Origin: Octopus sinensis
Taxonomy: Eukaryota
Length of the DNA: 64,000 bases
Assembly (NCBI RefSeq): GCF_006345805.1
Contig: NC_043006.1
Coordinates: forward strand, 84,320,001 to 84,384,000
Direction of reading: 5' to 3'
The notes beneath the pieces were generated by a model, which was given only the letters and a program-made list of their open reading frames with translations, did not search any database and had not been told where the DNA came from. Position numbers and translations under genes: made by a program. This document shows positions 9,856 to 64,000 of the stretch, one piece after another (the stretch's first letter is position 1; every line of letters begins with the position of its first letter).

Positions 9856-9934
<79 letters not shown>

Positions 9935-10060
9935 TATATCACAATCAAGGAACGGCCATAATAGGCCATTCACCCACTAGAAATAACAGCCAAAAAGCTT
10001 CAACCGCAAAATAACATTAATTCCGTAAACCAGGAAAAATTAAAAAACATTTACCCTGAA

Positions 10061-10167
10061 ATTCCTTATACGATGCACCGTTTCTTCTACTGTTTAATGG
10101 TAAACTAACCTGATTAAATTAAATCAAGCCAATCTACCATAGGCCCTTAGATTCATCAGTAAGGAAT
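10061..10167 (-). ncRNA. Type I hammerhead ribozyme, array unit 1
   Basis: Exact reverse complement of 14076-14182. Confidence 0.85.
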
Positions 10168-10554
10168 AGCCAAATCGGAACAGATATTTTTCACGAGGCA
10201 TTCTCGTCCATGCCTCGCCAATATCTGACCTAAAATTTTCAAATCGTCGCACTCGCGCCAATTTATCGGCAGCAAATAAATATAAGCCGCCGATTCCATT
10301 ACGGAACCAACCAGAAAATTCATAATTAATCAATATAGGGAGGCAAAAAAAAATTTTGTAGAATTCTTTTGCCCCAGCGGCCTAGTGGGAAAAAATTAAA
10401 TAGTCATAAACCATTTTTAAGTTCAATATCACAATCAAGGAACGGCCATAATAGGCCATTCACCCACTAGAAATAACAGCCAAAAAGCTTCAACCAACCG
10501 CAAAATAACATTAATTCCGTAAACCAGGAGAAAATTAAAAACATTTACCCTGAA

Positions 10555-10665
10555 ATTCCTTATACGATGCACCGTTTCTTCTACTGTTTAATGGTAACTA
10601 ACCTGATTAAATTAAATCAACCCAATCTACCATACCATAGGCCCTTAGATTCATCAGTAAGGAAT
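10555..10665 (-). ncRNA. Type I hammerhead ribozyme, array unit 2
   Basis: Core intact; small indels in the stem II extension. Confidence 0.8.
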
Positions 10666-11049
10666 AGCCAAATCGGAACAGATATTTTTCACGAGGCATT
10701 CTCGTCCATGCCTCGCCAATATCTGACCTAAAATTTTCAAATCGTCGCACTCGCGCCAAATTTATCGGCAGCAAATAAATATAAGCCGCCGATTCCATTA
10801 CGGAACCAACCAGAAAATTCATAATTAATCAATATAGGGAGGCAAAAAAAATTTTGTAGAATTCTTTTGCCCCCAGCGGCCTAGTGGGAAAAAATTAAAT
10901 AGTCATAAACCATTTTTAAGTTCAATATCACAATCAAGGAACGGCCATAATAGGCCATTCACCCACTAGAAATAACAGCCAAAAAGCTTCAACCGCAAAA
11001 TAACATTATTCCGTAAACCAGGAGAAAATTAAAAAACATTTACCCTGAA

Positions 11050-11156
11050 ATTCCTTATACGATGCACCGTTTCTTCTACTGTTTAATGGTAAACTAACCT
11101 GATTAAATTAAATCAAGCCAATCTACCATAGGCCCTTAGATTCATCAGTAAGGAAT
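11050..11156 (-). ncRNA. Type I hammerhead ribozyme, array unit 3
   Basis: Core and stems intact. Confidence 0.85.
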
Positions 11157-11541
11157 AGCCAAATCGGAACAGATATTTTTCACGAGGCATTCTCGTCCAT
11201 GCCTCGCCAATATCTGACCTAAAATTTTCAAATCGTCGCACTCGCGCCAAATTTATCGGCAGCAAATAAATATAAGCCGCCGATTCCATTACGGAACCAA
11301 CCAGAAAATTCATAATTAATCAATATAGGGAGGCAAAAAAAAATTTTGTAGAATTCTTTTGCCCCCAGCGGCCTAGTGGGAAAAAATTAAATAGTCATAA
11401 ACCATTTTTAAGTTCAATATCACAATCAAGGAACGGCCATAATAGGCCATTCACCCACTAGAAATAACAGCCAAAAAGCTTCAACCGCAAAATAACATTA
11501 TTCCGTAAACCAGGAGAAAATTAAAAAACATTTACCCTGAA

Positions 11542-11648
11542 ATTCCTTATACGATGCACCGTTTCTTCTACTGTTTAATGGTAAACTAACCTGATTAAAT
11601 TAAATCAAGCCAATCTACCATAGGCCCTTAGATTCATCAGTAAGGAAT
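11542..11648 (-). ncRNA. Type I hammerhead ribozyme, array unit 4
   Basis: Core and stems intact. Confidence 0.85.
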
Positions 11649-12032
11649 AGCCAAATCGGAACAGATATTTTTCACGAGGCATTCTCGTCCATGCCTCGCC
11701 AATATCTGACCTAAATTTTCAAATCGTCGCACTCGCGCCAATTTATCGGCAGCAAATAAATATAAGCCGCCGATTCCATTACGGAACCAACCAAAAATTC
11801 ATAATTAATCAATATAGGGAGGCAAAAAAAAAATTTTGTAGAATTCTTTTGCCCCCAGCGGCCTAGTGGGAAAAAATTAAATAGTCATAAACCATTTTTA
11901 AGTTCAATATCACAATCAAGGAACGGCCATAATAGGCCATTCACCCACTAGAAATAACAGCCAAAAAGCTTCAACCGCAAAATAACATTAATTCCGTAAA
12001 CCAGGAGAAAATTAAAAAACATTTACCCTGAA

Positions 12033-12139
12033 ATTCCTTATACGATGCACCGTTTCTTCTACTGTTTAATGGTAAACTAACCTGATTAAATTAAATCAAG
12101 CCAATCTACCATAGGCCCTTAGATTCATCAGTAAGGAAT
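12033..12139 (-). ncRNA. Type I hammerhead ribozyme, array unit 5
   Basis: Core and stems intact. Confidence 0.85.
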
Positions 12140-12523
12140 AGCCAAATCGGAACAGATATTTTTCACGAGGCATTCTCGTCCATGCCTCGCCAATATCTGA
12201 CCTAAAATTTTCAAATCGTCGCACTCGCGCCAAATTTATCGGCAGCAAATAAATATAAGCCGCCGATTCCATTACGGAACCAACCAGAAAATTCATAATT
12301 AATCAATATAGGGAGGCAAAAAAAATTTTGTAGAATTCTTTTGCCCCAGCGGCCTAGTGGGAAAAAATTAAATAGTCATAAACCATTTTTAAGTTCAATA
12401 TCACAATCAAGGAACGGCCATAATAGGCCATTCACCCACTAGAAATAACAGCCAAAAAGCTTCAACCGCAAAATAACATTAATTCCGTAAACCAGGAGAA
12501 AATTAAAAAACATTTACCCTGAA

Positions 12524-12630
12524 ATTCCTTATACGATGCACCGTTTCTTCTACTGTTTAATGGTAAACTAACCTGATTAAATTAAATCAAGCCAATCTAC
12601 CATAGGCCCTTAGATTCATCAGTAAGGAAT
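12524..12630 (-). ncRNA. Type I hammerhead ribozyme, array unit 6
   Basis: Core and stems intact. Confidence 0.85.
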
Positions 12631-13014
12631 AGCCAAATCGGAACAGATATTTTTCACGAGGCATTCTCGTCCATGCCTCGCCAATATCTGACCTAAATTT
12701 TCAAATCGTCGCACTCGCGCCAAATTTATCGGCAGCAAATAAATATAAGCCGCCGATTCCATTACGGAACCAACCAGAAAATTCATAATTAATCAATATA
12801 GGGAGGCAAAAAAAATTTTGTAGAATTCTTTTGCCCCCAGCGGCCTAGTGGGAAAAAATTAAATAGTCATAAACCATTTTTAAGTTCAATATCACAATCA
12901 AGGAACGGCCATAATAGGCCATTCACCCACTAGAAATAACAGCCAAAAAGCTTCAACCGCAAAATAACATTAATTCCGTAAACCAGGAGAAAATTAAAAA
13001 ACATTTACCCTGAA

Positions 13015-13120
13015 ATTCCTTATACGATGCACCGTTTCTTCTACTGTTTAATGGTAAACTAACCTGATTAAATTAAATCAACCCAATCTACCATAGGCCC
13101 TTAGATTCATCAGTAGGAAT
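13015..13120 (-). ncRNA. Type I hammerhead ribozyme, array unit 7
   Basis: Core intact; 1-nt deletion in stem I (cagtaggaat instead of cagtaaggaat). Confidence 0.75.
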
Positions 13121-13505
13121 AGCCAAATCGGAACAGATATTTTTCACGAGGCATTCTCGTCCATGCCTCGCCAATATCTGACCTAAAATTTTCAAATCGT
13201 CGCACTCGCGCCAAATTTATCGGCAGCAAATAAATATAAGCCGCCGATTCCATTACGGAACCAACCAGAAAATTCATAATTAATCAATATAGGGAGGCAA
13301 AAAAAATTTTGTAGAATTCTTTTGCCCCCAGCGGCCTAGTGGGAAAAAATTAAATAGTCATAAACCATTTTTAAGTTCAATATCACAATCAAGGAACGGC
13401 CATAATAGGCCATTCACCCACTAGAAATAACAGCCAAAAAGCTTCAACCGCAAAATAACATTAATTCCGTAAACCAGGAGAAAATTAAAAAACATTTACC
13501 CTGAA

Positions 13506-13612
13506 ATTCCTTATACGATGCACCGTTTCTTCTACTGTTTAATGTAAAACTAACCTGATTAAATTAAATCAACCCAATCTACCATAGGCCCTTAGATTCA
13601 TCAGTAAGGAAT
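13506..13612 (-). ncRNA. Type I hammerhead ribozyme, array unit 8
   Basis: Core intact; minor changes in the stem II extension. Confidence 0.8.
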
Positions 13613-13862
13613 AGCCAAATCGGAACAGATATTTTTCACGAGGCATTCTCGTCCATGCCTCGCCAATATCTGACCTAAAATTTTCAAATCGTCGCACTCG
13701 CGCCAAATTTATCGGCAGCAAATAAATATAAGCCGCCGATTCCATTACGGAACCAACCAGAAAATTCATAATTAATCAATATAGGGAGGCAAAAAAAAAT
13801 TTTGTAGAATTCTTTTGCCCCCAGCGGCCTAGTGGGAAAAAAATTAAATAGTCATAAACCAT

Positions 13863-14413
13863 GGGGGCCAAAGAATTCTACAAAATTTTTTTTTTTTGCC
13901 TCCCTATATTGATTAATTATGAATTTTCTGGTTGGTTCCGTAATGGAATCGGCGGCTTATATTTATTTGCTGCCGATAAATTTGGCGCGAGTGCGACGAT
14001 TTGAAAATTTTAGGTCAGATATTGGCGAGGCATGGACGAGAATGCCTCGTGAAAAATATCTGTTCCGATTTGGCTATTCCTTACTGATGAATCTAAGGGC
14101 CTATGGTAGATTGGCTTGATTTAATTTAATCAGGTTAGTTTACCATTAAACAGTAGAAGAAACGGTGCATCGTATAAGGAATTTCAGGGTAAATGTTTTT
14201 TTAATTTTCTCCTGGTTTACAGAATTAATGTTATTTTGCGGTTGAAGCTTTTTGGCTGTTATTTCTAGTGGGTGAATGGCCTATTATGGCCGTTCCTTGA
14301 TTGTGATATTGAACTTAAAAATGGTTTATGACTATTTAATTTTTTTCCCACTAGGCCGCTGGGGGCAAAAGAATTCTACAAAATTTTTTTTTTTTTTGCC
14401 TCCCTATATTGAT

Positions 14414-14416
<3 letters not shown>
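13863..14416 (+). repeat. Inverted ~1.1-unit copy of the 491-bp repeat (fold-back)
   Basis: Reverse complement of ~13280-13822 with a 40-bp spacer (13823-13862). Followed by (AT)n at 14417-14461. Confidence 0.95.
14076..14182 (+). ncRNA. Type I hammerhead ribozyme (copy in the inverted unit)
   Basis: Stem I ATTCCTTA (14076-83) pairs with TAAGGAAT (14175-82). CTGATGA at 14084-90. Stem II TCTA/TAGA encloses a 19-bp hairpin (14103-21/14128-46). GAAA at 14159-62. Stem III A-CGG-tgca-TCG-T. GUA cleavage triplet at 14172-74. Confidence 0.85.
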
Positions 14417-14462
<46 letters not shown>

Positions 14463-14761: not shown

Positions 14762-14909
14762 TCCGTCTTAATTATTTTCTATTTACCTTCTGTTTATTTC
14801 CCTGTTGTACCTGCCTCGTCTTTATCGGCACACCACCATACAAAGCTTCCGGTCATATCCGAACTACCATCAACCATACTCGCCCCGTCATCACCTATCC
14901 TCAAATTCA

Positions 14910-14923
14910 ATCACCATCATCAT

Positions 14924-14955
<32 letters not shown>

Positions 14956-15069
14956 CCATCATCATCACCATCATCACCATCATCATCATCGTCATCGTCA
15001 TCGTCATCATCATCATCATCATCATCACCATCATCATCACCATCATCACCATCATCATCATCGTCATCG

Positions 15070-15113
<44 letters not shown>

Positions 15114-15258
15114 GTCATCATCATCATCGTCATCATCATCATCATCGTCATCATCATCATCATCGTCATCATCATCATCATCATCATCGTCATCAACAAC
15201 GTCATCGTGATCGTGATCGTGATCGTGATCGTGATCGTCATCATCATCATCATCACCA
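14910..15258. repeat. (CAT)n/(CGT)/(CAC) trinucleotide repeat
   Basis: Direct reading. Confidence 0.95.
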
Positions 15259-15341
15259 CCTATATATTGAAAATTCAGCAATCGATACCATTACTAAAAC
15301 CACTGTGACTACCACTAACATCTGCACCACTACTGACATAC

Positions 15342-44716: not shown

Positions 44717-45148
44717 TACATGCACATACATATATACATGTTAATTACTAGTAACGGAAGCACTATTAGTTCAAAATTAGTGATATGTAATACATACTCA
44801 AAATGTAAATATGTCGAAAGCTTTCTTAACTGTGGTTGTCATTTTGAAAGAGTATGTCTTATGGACATAAGGGTTACTTTCTCCAGAAGAATACCGTGCG
44901 GAAACCCGTCGTATGAGCGCGTGCGTATGTATTGAAAGGTAGCCATTTCAAATGAGATAGCTTAACAGTTAACCTGTGTTTCTAAATCCATATCTATCCA
45001 TCTTTCAATCAGGAACTAAAGAAAATTTGTTTTTCGATTATCGTTTGGAATTATACGCATTTGAATAGATTACAGGGAGTATATCCAAGTCAAGATTAAA
45101 AATAGAGATTCGGTTTCAAAATTAATTTTATTATTGTCATATACTACA

Positions 45149-45582
45149 AGGCGGCGAGCTGGCAGAAACGTTAGCACGCCAGGCGAAATGCCTATCAGTA
45201 TTTCGTATGTCTTTACGTCCTGAGTTCAAATTCCGCTGAGGTCGACTTTGCCTTTCGTCCTTTCGGGGTCGATAAATTAAGTACCAGTTGCATACTGGGG
45301 TAGATCTAATCGACTAGCCTCCTCCCCATAATTTCAGACCTTGTGCCTAGAGTAGATAAGCATATACTTCAAGGGGGTAAGCTGGCAGAATCGTTAGTAC
45401 ACCGTGCAAAATGCTTAGCAGTCTTTCGCCCGTCGCTACGTTCTGAGTTCAAATTCCACCGAGATCGACTTTGCTTTTCACCCTTTCAGGGTCGATAAAT
45501 TGAATACCAGTTGAGTACTGGGGTCGATGTAATCGACTATCACCCTCCCCAAATTTCAGGCCTTGTGCCTATAGTAGAAAGG
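45149..45582 (+). mobile_element. SINE family A dimer enclosed by one target-site duplication
   Basis: Two full copies; attattgtcatatactaca at 45130-48 and 45583-601. Confidence 0.85.
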
Positions 45583-54639: not shown

Positions 54640-54675
54640 GTTCTACAAATATATATATATATTTGTGTGTGTATA

Positions 54676-54715
<40 letters not shown>

Positions 54716-55026
54716 AATATATATATATATATATATTTGTGTATGTATATATATATATGATATATATATTTCTGTATATATATATATATAATATTTGTGT
54801 ATATATATATATATATATAATATATATATATATATATTATTTGTGTATATAATATATATATATATATCTATATATATATATATATATATTCTGTATATAA
54901 TATATATATATATATATATTTCGTATATATATATATATATATTTCTGTATTATATATATATAATATATATATATATATTATATATATATAATATATTACA
55001 AATATATATATATATAACTACATACA

Positions 55027-55074
<48 letters not shown>

Positions 55075-55179
55075 ATATATATTTGTGTATGTATATATAT
55101 ATATATAATTTCTGTATATATATATATATATATATTTGTGTATATATATATATATTCTGTATATTATATATATATTTCT

Positions 55180-55273
<94 letters not shown>

Positions 55274-55333
55274 CATACACAAATATATATATATAGTATA
55301 TATATTATATACATAATACATATATATATATAT

Positions 55334-55378
<45 letters not shown>

Positions 55379-62423: not shown

Positions 62424-63103
62424 GTTACTTTTATATGAAAAGATGGACGATGACTTCACAGCCTCATAATGACGAGCAAGCAGAAACTTCGCAGTCACTG
62501 TCAACACTTTTCTTGTAAAGATCTATAAATATGTACTCTACTTGAAAGTATTGATTAATACTTTAATTTAATGTTTTTTAATATATAATTTAACATAAAA
62601 ACAATCATTTATAGACATGCATACAATATATCATATACGTGTGTGTGTGTGTGTGTGTGTGTGCGTGCGCACGCGTGTTTTTTAATGTGTGTATGTGTGT
62701 GTATGAGTGCATGCATACATACACACACATGCATGCAAACGTACAGACACACATAAATACATAATACATATATACATATTTACATATACATGCATTCATT
62801 CATGCTTGCATATATATAAAAATACATACATACACACACATACATAGAAAAATACGTACATACATGCACACACATACATACATACATATATACAGACACA
62901 TATGCTTACACACACATACATACATACATACACATACATACATACACACATAGTACATATATACACACATACATACATGCATACATACATACATACATAC
63001 ATAAATACATAAGGTTTTTTTAAAATTTAAAGGATGGCGGTTAAACAAGATGCTTTCTTGGTAGCCTTGGTAGTTATTCTAAATTCAAAAGAGAAAGAGG
63101 TGC

Positions 63104-63390
63104 TACATACATACATACATACATACATACATACATACATACATACATAATACATACAATACTACATACATACATACTACATACATACATACATACATAC
63201 CATACATACATACATACATACATACATTCATTCATCATTCATTCATTATACATACATACATACATACATACATACATACATACACACATACATACATACA
63301 TACATACATACATACATACATACATACATACATACATACATACATACAACATACATACATACATTCATTCATTCATTCATCATTCATTCA

Positions 63391-63421
<31 letters not shown>

Positions 63422-63828
63422 CATACATACATACATACATAATACATACATACATACATACAACATTCATTCCATTCATCATTCATTCATTCATACATAC
63501 ATACATACATACATACATACATACATACATACATACATACATACATACATACAGACATACATACATACATAACATACATACATACATACATTCATTCATT
63601 CATTCATTCATCATACATACATACATACATACATACATACATACATACATACATACACCATACATCATACATACATACATACAGACATACAACATACATA
63701 CATACATACATTCATTCATTCATCTCATTCATTCATACCGACATACATACATACATACATACATACATACATACATACATTCATTCATCATTCATTCATA
63801 CATACATACATACATACACATACATACA

Positions 63829-63860
<32 letters not shown>

Positions 63861-64000
63861 AACATACATACATACATACATACATACATACATACATACA
63901 TACAACTACATACATACATACATACATACATACATACATACAATACATACAATACATACATACATTCATACATACATACATACATACATACATACATACA
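63104..64000. repeat. (ACAT)n/(CATT)n compound tetranucleotide array running to the window end
   Basis: Direct reading. Confidence 0.95.

What the first reader, a model, noticed from the sequence alone, without database searches (positions are those of the whole stretch)
9936..14416. Tandem 491-bp hammerhead-ribozyme array: candidate cephalopod retrozyme or self-cleaving circular RNA system
Seen in the sequence: nine copies of a ~491-bp unit, each with a complete type I hammerhead on one strand. The parts are an 8-bp stem I (ATTCCTTA/TAAGGAAT), CUGAUGA, stem II, GAAA, stem III and a GUA cleavage triplet. The core nucleotides are identical in all nine copies, whereas other positions carry indels and a few substitutions. 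Predicted cuts (for example between 10069/10068 on the minus strand) recur every 491-495 nt, so one read-through transcript would be diced into monomers. Established knowledge: tandem hammerhead repeats of this kind are the metazoan non-LTR retrozymes and hammerhead satellites (newt satellite 2, schistosome Sm-alpha, cave-cricket pDo500, coral and mussel retrozymes), and several are expressed as small circular RNAs. Inference: this is such a system with a large unit. I do not recognise this family, but I cannot confirm it is undescribed.
Basis: partly seen in the sequence, partly recalled or inferred. Interest (0 to 1): 0.93.

Follow-up and report, generated by a model that had tools for sequence, protein, structure and literature searches.

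The report
Hammerhead retrozyme array, Penelope-type insertion
This 4.5-kb block of 491-base non-coding repeats, each carrying a hammerhead self-cleaving RNA motif, is one of several hundred recent insertions of a ribozyme-bearing mobile element (a "retrozyme"); its insertion scars suggest it was reverse-transcribed from a small RNA into (TA)n microsatellites by Penelope-like machinery, so it is a new family of a known kind.

Summary
Window 9936-13862 carries 8.0 direct 491-bp units. An inverted ~1.1-unit arm follows (13863-~14416). All nine units keep the hammerhead core boxes, and eight pass a full descriptor that random sequence almost never passes. The motif is atypical. Stem II is 68 nt long, its core-proximal position 10.1/11.1 is unpaired, and Rfam's hammerhead models do not score it.

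The family is dispersed, with at least 1118 motifs and at least 480-770 (TA)n junctions genome-wide. Twenty other loci share one layout: two head-to-head arms with sense strands pointing outward, a variable inner junction, outer ends fixed at unit position 133 or 238 (usually one of each), and (TA)n on both sides. These features match published Penelope-like element (PLE) insertion scars.

Locus-private substitutions sit in every unit of both arms (25/25). This points to a single one-unit template per insertion, most simply a circular RNA copied by rolling-circle, twin-primed reverse transcription.

One stem I pair covaries genome-wide: C-G 385, U-A 729, discordant 2.

Self-cleavage, circular RNA and the autonomous partner were not shown.

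Verdict: a new member of the known animal non-LTR retrozyme class. The scan already reported this same family at other places in this genome.

The parts
9887..9935 (.). Left (TA)n microsatellite flank (target site)
   Evidence: TRF rows 9858-9939; sequence; same kind of flank at 20 of 21 loci
9936..13862 (-). Long arm: 8.0 units of 491-495 bp, hammerhead-sense strand is the minus strand. The outer (left) end is at unit position 133 (..CCUUGAUUGUGAUAU). The inner end is truncated at unit position 145.
   Evidence: TRF; blastn map against a monomer numbered from the predicted cleavage site
9936..9948 (-). Terminus type 1: UUGAUUGUGAUAU, ending at unit position 133 and abutting (TA)n
   Evidence: 483 such junctions genome-wide, control 0
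11050..11156 (-). Representative hammerhead motif. Stem I 11156-11149 pairs with 11057-11050. CUGAUGA is 11148-11142. Stem II is 11141-11074 (10.1=11141, 11.1=11074). GAAA is 11073-11070. Stem III/loop is 11069-11060. U16.1 is 11059 and A17 is 11058. The predicted cut lies between 11058 and 11057.
   Evidence: variants mapped
10061..10167 (-). Hammerhead motif, copy 1 (cut after 10069). Further copies: 10555-10665, 11542-11648, 12033-12139, 12524-12630, ~13015-13120 (1-nt deletion in stem I), 13506-13612.
13746..13942 (.). Palindrome formed by the head-to-head junction of the two arms (junction at 13862/13863). It gives a spurious sub-threshold MIR8562 match.
   Evidence: 84.8 bits against a gathering score of 211
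13863..14416 (+). Short inverted arm: ~1.1 unit, hammerhead-sense strand is the plus strand. The inner end is at unit position 183. The outer end is at unit position ~238 (..CCCUAUAUUGAUUAA), running into (AT)n.
14076..14182 (+). Hammerhead motif of the inverted arm, predicted cut after 14174
14409..14420 (+). Terminus type 2: UUGAUUAA(UUAU), unit position ~238. The exact end is ambiguous against the microsatellite.
   Evidence: 774 such junctions genome-wide, control 1
14417..14461 (.). Right (AT)n microsatellite flank (target site)
   Evidence: TRF

Best explanation
This locus is one insertion of a young, non-coding, non-LTR retrozyme family with a ~491-nt unit, 37% GC and no ORF. The inferred life cycle has three steps. 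(1) Arrays are transcribed on the hammerhead-sense strand and the type-I hammerhead cuts after GUA, releasing ~491-nt monomers that host ligase can circularise. (2) A Penelope-like element (PLE) reverse transcriptase/GIY-YIG endonuclease nicks a (TA)n microsatellite. The two DNA 3' ends each prime cDNA synthesis on the same RNA at one of two internal start sites. Each start site is a hairpin followed by UUGAUU-N5-6-AU and ends at unit position 133 or 238. (3) Reverse transcription runs round the one-unit template several times, which produces the tandem units. The two cDNAs are then joined head-to-head by microhomology. Shown here: the array anatomy, its dispersal, the fixed ends, the (TA)n target, the single-template origin of both arms, and covariation in stem I. 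Inferred: RNA cleavage, circularity, the initiation signal, and PLE as the enzyme source.
For: Motif and chance: (8 hits in the array against 0.005 expected per window).

Dispersal: at least 302 near-identical matches on many chromosomes, 1118 motifs, and 483 plus 774 terminus-(TA)n junctions.

Architecture: 18 two-arm loci all have a minus arm followed by a plus arm. In 17 of the 18, one end lies at ~133 and the other at ~238. Inner junctions vary. Both sides are (TA)n at 20 of 21 loci. Published PLE hallmarks are tandem/inverted insertions with an inverted 5'-truncated copy, a one-sided tail, and a (TA)n bias (PMC8557442).

Single template: substitution divergence is 0.30% within an arm, 0.21% between arms of one locus, and 0.78% between loci. 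All 25 informative locus-fixed variants are present in all units of both arms, and within-array variants are singletons.

Hammerhead under constraint: the stem I pair is C-G in 385 copies, U-A in 729, U.G in 0 and C.A in 2. Contigs from other species labels show G.U to G-C in stem III, GUA to GUC at the cut site, and no listed variant in CUGAUGA or GAAA. Core minor-allele frequency is 0.07% against 0.36% elsewhere.

Inner ends are enriched just 3' of the predicted cut: 8 of 36 fall within positions 1-30, against 2.2 expected (P=0.0012).

The monomer RNA is strongly structured (z=-6.1), and stem I closes the body of the molecule.

The genome holds many GIY-YIG copies, some in 780-883-aa open frames.
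Against: - No Rfam hammerhead hit, even at E<=10.
- Position 10.1/11.1, normally G-C, is A.A here. Across 32 loci it is A.A 7, A.C 12, A-U 6 and U.U 7. That could weaken or abolish catalysis.
- No read-level RNA evidence for cleavage or circles.
- No PLE with a matching 3' end was identified.
- The one-sided extension is 105 nt, against 30-40 bp reported for PLEs.
- The stem I covariation is essentially one evolutionary event inherited by two subfamilies.
- The inner-end enrichment is a post hoc window on 36 points.
- Array homogeneity could owe something to gene conversion.
Confidence: 0.72

Rival explanations
1. Same retroelement, but the hammerhead is a catalytically dead or dispensable relic. 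Templates would be uncleaved linear multimeric transcripts of existing arrays, copied by target-primed reverse transcription without any circular intermediate.
For: The 10.1/11.1 position is unpaired in ~81% of sampled loci. A lineage that broke an A-U pair to U.U still amplified. No Rfam match. No RNA proof. PLE-type hammerheads cleave poorly in vitro (PMC4209133).
Against: Locus-private variants occupy every unit of both arms (25/25), which requires a one-unit bottleneck. The stem I pair covaries, and the core stays invariant across subfamilies and species labels. Inner ends cluster just after the predicted cut.
Confidence: 0.15
2. An ordinary satellite or minisatellite that grew locally by unequal crossing-over and replication slippage. 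On this reading the hammerhead-like motif is a passenger and the inverted copy is a later rearrangement.
For: Tandem structure with 98% unit identity. A recent preprint models retrozyme arrays as expanding by unequal crossover (10.64898/2026.07.22.740005).
Against: Hundreds of separate loci share the same two termini, the same arm orientation rule and the same (TA)n flanks. Unequal crossover cannot homogenise inverted arms. Many insertions are shorter than one unit yet still carry both termini.
Confidence: 0.04
3. A DNA-level mobile element: either a Helitron-like rolling-circle transposon that targets AT dinucleotides, or re-integration of rolling-circle-amplified extrachromosomal circular DNA.
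For: Tandem units and an A/T-rich target. No direct RNA evidence.
Against: The ends do not resemble Helitron termini (read from the sequence against established knowledge). Both outer ends are 3' ends of the same sense strand with variable 5' truncation at the centre, which is the twin-priming geometry of reverse transcription. Re-integration of circular DNA predicts random break points, not two fixed ends.
Confidence: 0.04

Closest known systems
Metazoan non-LTR retrozymes (Cervera & de la Pena 2020, PMC7229834: coral, mussel, axolotl)
   Same: Non-coding, low-GC tandem repeats with a type-I hammerhead in each unit, dispersed in the genome. The authors proposed copying of a circular RNA into tandem cDNA, with PLEs as the likely helper.
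   Different: The unit is 491 nt, against the reported ~170-400 nt. Stem II is 68 nt with an unpaired 10.1/11.1 position. RNA forms were not shown here. This family also has stereotyped two-arm insertions with two fixed termini in (TA)n, which that paper does not describe.
Penelope-like elements and their pLTR hammerheads (PMC8557442; PMC4209133)
   Same: Tandem/inverted insertions, an inverted 5'-truncated copy, an extension at one end only, and a (TA)n bias. [quoted passage not shown] Pairs of motifs on opposite strands 100-700 bp apart were reported.
   Different: There is no RT/EN ORF in the unit. The one-sided extension is 105 nt, not 30-40 bp. Stem III here is a 4-bp hairpin rather than the minimal form. 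No sequence link to a specific PLE was established.
pDo500 hammerhead satellite of Dolichopoda cave crickets (PMC2837043)
   Same: A ~500-bp tandem unit with a hammerhead, and compensatory changes in the stems.
   Different: pDo500 is described as a satellite making up about 5% of the genome. This family is a set of dispersed short arrays with defined insertion ends.
L1 twin priming
   Same: Two target DNA ends prime on one RNA. This yields two segments with their sense 3' ends outward, joined by microhomology.
   Different: Here both primings use specific internal sites and each arm can hold many unit lengths, which implies a circular or multimeric template.

Membership tests
Hammerhead ribozyme, type I | Conserved core CUGAUGA ... 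GAAA ... UH| in the right order between three helices, with stem I open | tested here: met
   eight copies pass a full descriptor and all nine keep the core boxes
Hammerhead ribozyme, type I | Match to the curated covariance model (Rfam RF00163 or other hammerhead models) | tested here: not met
   No hit at gathering score or at E<=10. RF00163 does find other hammerheads in this genome. The 68-nt stem II is the likely reason (inference).
Hammerhead ribozyme, type I | Watson-Crick pair (usually G-C) at 10.1/11.1 closing stem II on the core | tested here: not met
   A.A in this window. Across 32 loci: A.A 7, A.C 12, A-U 6, U.U 7.
Hammerhead ribozyme, type I | Helices supported by covariation | tested here: met
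   Stem I pair: C-G 385, U-A 729, discordant 2. This is one event, so support is modest. Stem III shows G.U to G-C. The distal stem II hairpin shows both pair-keeping and pair-breaking changes.
Hammerhead ribozyme, type I | Site-specific self-cleavage | not testable with these tools
   Needs in vitro transcription. The only indirect hint is the enrichment of cDNA stop points just 3' of the predicted site.
Metazoan non-LTR retrozyme | Non-coding, low-GC tandem units, each with a type-I hammerhead, without LTR, PBS or PPT | tested here: met
   GC 36.8%; the longest stop-free stretch is 68 codons; tandem structure. PBS/PPT were not specifically searched.
Metazoan non-LTR retrozyme | Dispersed multicopy family (mobile) | tested here: met
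Metazoan non-LTR retrozyme | Expressed as linear and circular monomer RNA | tested here: inconclusive
   Only contigs were available: one 208-nt contig in a poly(A) RNA-seq metatranscriptome, and other holders of unknown library type
PLE-mobilised (non-autonomous Penelope-like) element | Tandem plus inverted 5'-truncated arrangement, a one-sided extension, and a (TA)n target | tested here: met
   compared with PMC8557442. The extension is 105 nt rather than 30-40 bp.
PLE-mobilised (non-autonomous Penelope-like) element | Autonomous PLE present in the same genome | tested here: inconclusive
   147 GIY-YIG matches over the cut-off, some in 780-883-aa open frames. RT linkage was not checked because no more genome DNA could be fetched.
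PLE-mobilised (non-autonomous Penelope-like) element | Sequence shared with a PLE pseudo-LTR or 3' end | not tested

The most novel reading that the evidence does not exclude
The insertion scars of this family may be a genomic read-out of the retrozyme life cycle, which has so far only been hypothesised. On this reading each insertion comes from one monomeric circular RNA. Both ends of a (TA)n break prime on that RNA at two specific hairpin+UUGAUU..AU start signals. The RNA is copied by rolling-circle reverse transcription, and copying tends to end where the hammerhead opens the circle. This would also mean that a hammerhead lacking the 10.1/11.1 pair and carrying a 68-nt stem II is active in vivo.
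Probability: 0.35. Interest if true: 0.65.

Novelty: new member of a known kind. Interest (0 to 1): 0.42.

Why it matters
Animal retrozymes are known, but two points are still argued from co-occurrence: how they are copied back into DNA, and whether PLEs do the copying. This family is young and has hundreds of stereotyped insertions. The scars themselves constrain the mechanism, because they show a single one-unit template, two defined start sites, twin priming and a (TA)n target. The family also offers a natural hammerhead variant with an unpaired 10.1/11.1 position whose activity can be tested. It extends retrozymes to a genome that the scan's notes call an octopus; I did not verify the species.

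Tried and rejected
- **Rfam, whole window and relaxed scan.** No hammerhead was found. The MIR8562, snoRNA and RalA rows are sub-threshold artefacts of the arm-junction palindrome and of (AT)n.
- **RNA evidence.** Both run searches returned only Logan contigs and no raw reads. The single read-laying run therefore could not show RNA ends, strand or circles. The "goes back 491" joints are equally expected from tandem DNA.
- **Further genome DNA.** I did not try to get round this.
- **Higher-order periodicity within arrays.** None found.
- **Arm length against terminus type.** No association by eye.
- **Window ORFs of 150 aa or more.** No Pfam domain. No tRNA or tRNA-like heads.
- **Literature.** No paper pairs octopus with hammerhead retrozymes or with such a satellite.
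- **Snap-back (hairpin) synthesis as the source of the inverted arm.** Rejected as the general rule, because the inner positions and outer ends of the two arms differ. Two loci (L036 at 93/93, L039 at 184/184) do have symmetric junctions at hairpin bases.
Full report
**Observation.** Tandem Repeats Finder reports 9936-13862 as 8.0 copies of a 491-bp unit at 98% identity. The array then inverts at 13862/13863. The stretch 13863 to about 14416 is roughly 1.1 unit in the opposite orientation, 98-100% complementary to the direct copies.

A strict search finds the motif AUUCCUUA-CUGAUGA-(68 nt)-GAAA-CGGUGCAUCG-UA|UAAGGAAU seven times on the minus strand and once on the plus strand (14076-14182). 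A ninth copy (about 13120-13015) has an intact core but a 1-nt deletion in the 5' strand of stem I. Predicted cuts fall after 10069, 10563, 11058, 11550, 12041, 12532, ~13023 and 13514 on the minus strand and after 14174 on the plus strand.

A generic type-I descriptor hits only the array in this window: 8 hits, against 1 hit in 200 random 64-kb sequences. The motif is therefore not a chance match.

**How good a hammerhead is it?** The eleven core nucleotides, the GUA triplet, an 8-bp stem I and a 4-bp stem III with a UGCA loop are all in place. Stem II is unusual. It opens with an A.A mismatch at 10.1/11.1, continues with UCUA/UAGA and an internal loop, and ends in a 19-bp hairpin. No Rfam hammerhead model matches at the gathering score or at E<=10. 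RF00163 does detect other hammerheads elsewhere in this genome.

Genome-wide pattern counts give a clean covariation at one stem I pair: C-G in 385 copies, U-A in 729, U.G in 0 and C.A in 2. This is essentially one double substitution separating two subfamilies. I estimate roughly 1 chance in 100-300 that two subfamily-diagnostic changes would land on paired positions and stay complementary; this is my own rough estimate, not a computed value.

Contigs from runs under other organism labels show three further things:
- Stem III changes from G.U to G-C.
- The cleavage nucleotide changes A to C, giving GUC, which still obeys the GUH rule.
- No variant is listed in CUGAUGA or GAAA.

Among 132 units I aligned, the core has a minor-allele frequency of 0.07%, against 0.36% outside the motif.

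Against this, position 10.1/11.1 is A.A, A.C, A-U or U.U in 7, 12, 6 and 7 of the first 32 loci listed, so it is not kept as a pair. Published PLE hammerheads typically have a long helix II and an unpaired nucleotide at its 5' end (PMC4209133), which this feature resembles. Those ribozymes cleaved poorly in vitro. Catalytic competence is therefore plausible but unproven.

**What the element is.** The unit is non-coding: GC is 36.8% and the longest stop-free stretch is 68 codons. Its RNA is predicted to be much more structured than shuffled controls (-155 against -118 kcal/mol, z=-6.1), and stem I closes the rest of the molecule.

The unit is dispersed in the genome the window comes from (2.72 Gb):
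- at least 302 near-identical matches on many chromosomes;
- 1118 hammerhead motifs of this type.

**Insertion architecture.** I fetched 20 other loci and mapped them against a monomer numbered from the predicted cleavage site.

All 18 two-arm loci, including this window, share one layout:
- The left arm has its sense strand on minus and the right arm on plus, so the sense 3' ends point outward.
- The inner junction differs from locus to locus, with 0-5 nt of overlap or a few extra bases.
- The outer ends are fixed at unit position 133 (..CCUUGAUUGUGAUAU) or 238 (..CCCUAUAUUGAUUAAUUAU). In 17 of 18 loci there is one end of each type.

At 20 of 21 loci both flanks are (TA)n. Genome-wide there are 483 position-133 junctions and 774 position-238 junctions with (TA)n (controls 0 and 1). 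Many form minus/plus pairs only 180-500 bp apart, which means heavily truncated insertions.

The ends do not lie at the ribozyme cut site. They are also not explained by AU microhomology alone: ATAT occurs at three further places in the unit that never serve as an end in the loci I read. Both ends instead follow TTGATT by 5-6 nt and lie a few bases 3' of a stable hairpin.

This set of features is what Craig et al. describe for PLE insertions: tandem plus inverted 5'-truncated copies, an extension at one end only, and a (TA)n preference (PMC8557442). The geometry is that of twin priming.

**Template.** Substitution divergence is 0.30% between units of one arm, 0.21% between opposite arms of one locus and 0.78% between loci. 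There are 32 substitutions fixed within a locus but different from the family consensus. For 25 of them both arms cover the site, and all 25 are present in every unit of both arms, including variants private to a single locus. Variants within an array are almost all singletons.

Each insertion therefore passed through a one-unit sequence bottleneck, and both arms were copied from it. Cervera and de la Pena proposed copying of a monomeric circular RNA into tandem cDNA but did not show it (PMC7229834). That is the simplest account, and it is an inference.

Inner ends, where cDNA synthesis stopped, are enriched within 30 nt 3' of the predicted cleavage site: 8 of 36, against 2.2 expected, P=0.0012 (one entry corrected by hand). 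This would fit a template that ends, or is opened, at the ribozyme site. The window for this test was chosen after seeing the data, and the sample is small.

**Helper element.** GIY-YIG domains are abundant in this genome: 147 of 150 scored candidates pass the Pfam cut-off out of 5029 first-look candidates, and several lie in 780-883-aa open frames without stops. That suits PLE RT-EN genes. I could not fetch their DNA to confirm an RT domain or a shared 3' end.

**RNA evidence.** Only assembled contigs of public runs were available. A poly(A) RNA-seq metatranscriptome holds one 208-nt contig (11067-11274, depth 2.7). Other holders are of unknown or guessed library type. Expression, cleavage and circularity are not shown.

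**Comparison and novelty.** The element meets the structural definition of a metazoan non-LTR retrozyme. Four differences are worth noting:
- the unit length, though pDo500 is also about 500 bp (PMC2837043);
- the long stem II;
- the unpaired 10.1/11.1 position;
- the very regular two-terminus, two-arm insertions.

A 2026 preprint argues from vertebrate genomes that retrozymes derive from PLEs and models array growth by unequal crossover. The data here favour arrays that are already tandem at insertion.

I found no paper on cephalopod hammerhead retrozymes. The scan's own notes already describe this 491-nt family at other places in this genome and reach the same reading. I came to my reading before seeing those notes, and they are not independent evidence. 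I did not verify the species.

**Verdict.** This is a real, well-defined retrozyme insertion and a new member of a known kind. It has useful mechanistic detail, but ribozyme activity and the RNA circle remain untested.

Noticed in passing
window 13746-13942: A sub-threshold 'MIR8562' Rfam match (84.8 bits against a gathering score of 211). It is simply the long palindrome made by the head-to-head arm junction, not a microRNA.
   Followed up: yes
run X16 laid on window 10920-11410: Summed contig depth is about 5e4-6e5 over the unit, roughly 5% of a 2.2-billion-letter run of another organism label and unknown library type. The unit makes up about 0.04% of this assembly. Either copy number is far higher in that species, or this assembly is collapsed, or the run is an RNA library rich in this RNA. 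The tool warns that summed depths are not copy numbers.
   Followed up: no
own genome, e.g. C1:48469825-48470114, C1:64482131-64482362, C1:151335266-151335466: Many minus/plus pairs of the two termini lie only 180-500 bp apart. These are mini-insertions shorter than one unit that probably lack the hammerhead. I counted them but could not read them.
   Followed up: partly
L051-L057 (own genome): Other hammerheads pass Rfam RF00163. Several are of CUGAAGAG...CGAAAC type with short stems. One pair lies in a 431-bp tandem (L056/L057). One canonical CUGACGAG motif (L052) sits next to an open frame with a weak zf-RVT match. None is related in sequence to the 491-nt family.
   Followed up: partly
own genome, e.g. 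C10:27570372-27570635, C6:82399801-82400064, C1:207477583-207477846: GIY-YIG domains lie inside 780-883-aa stop-free frames, and several have identical scores. They are candidate intact, recently active Penelope-like elements.
   Followed up: no
L036 junction (93/93) and L039 junction (184/184): Two of 18 loci have perfectly symmetric inner junctions placed at the bases of the two hairpins that precede the termini. Several other inner ends cluster at positions 183-233 (9 of 36 against 4.1 expected).
   Followed up: partly
window 14910-15255: An (ATCATC)n hexamer array of about 58 copies, immediately downstream of the insertion, overlapped by a mechanical 167-aa ORF (14805-15308).
   Followed up: no
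window 45138-45578: Two copies of a 223-bp repeat at 82% identity, with a GC-richer, SINE-like look. ARAGORN finds no tRNA there.
   Followed up: partly
window 54649-55378 and 62710-64000: Very long microsatellites: (AT)n of about 730 bp, and (CATA)n of at least 1.3 kb running off the window end. Such (AT)n tracts are potential targets for this family.
   Followed up: no
window unit position 433 (e.g. 10614, 13067 and 13558 regions): This is the only within-array substitution shared by several units. It is C/G in the stem II hairpin, with G in direct copies 2, 7 and 8 and C elsewhere, including the inverted arm. Its cause is unknown: recurrent mutation, gene conversion or assembly error.
   Followed up: no
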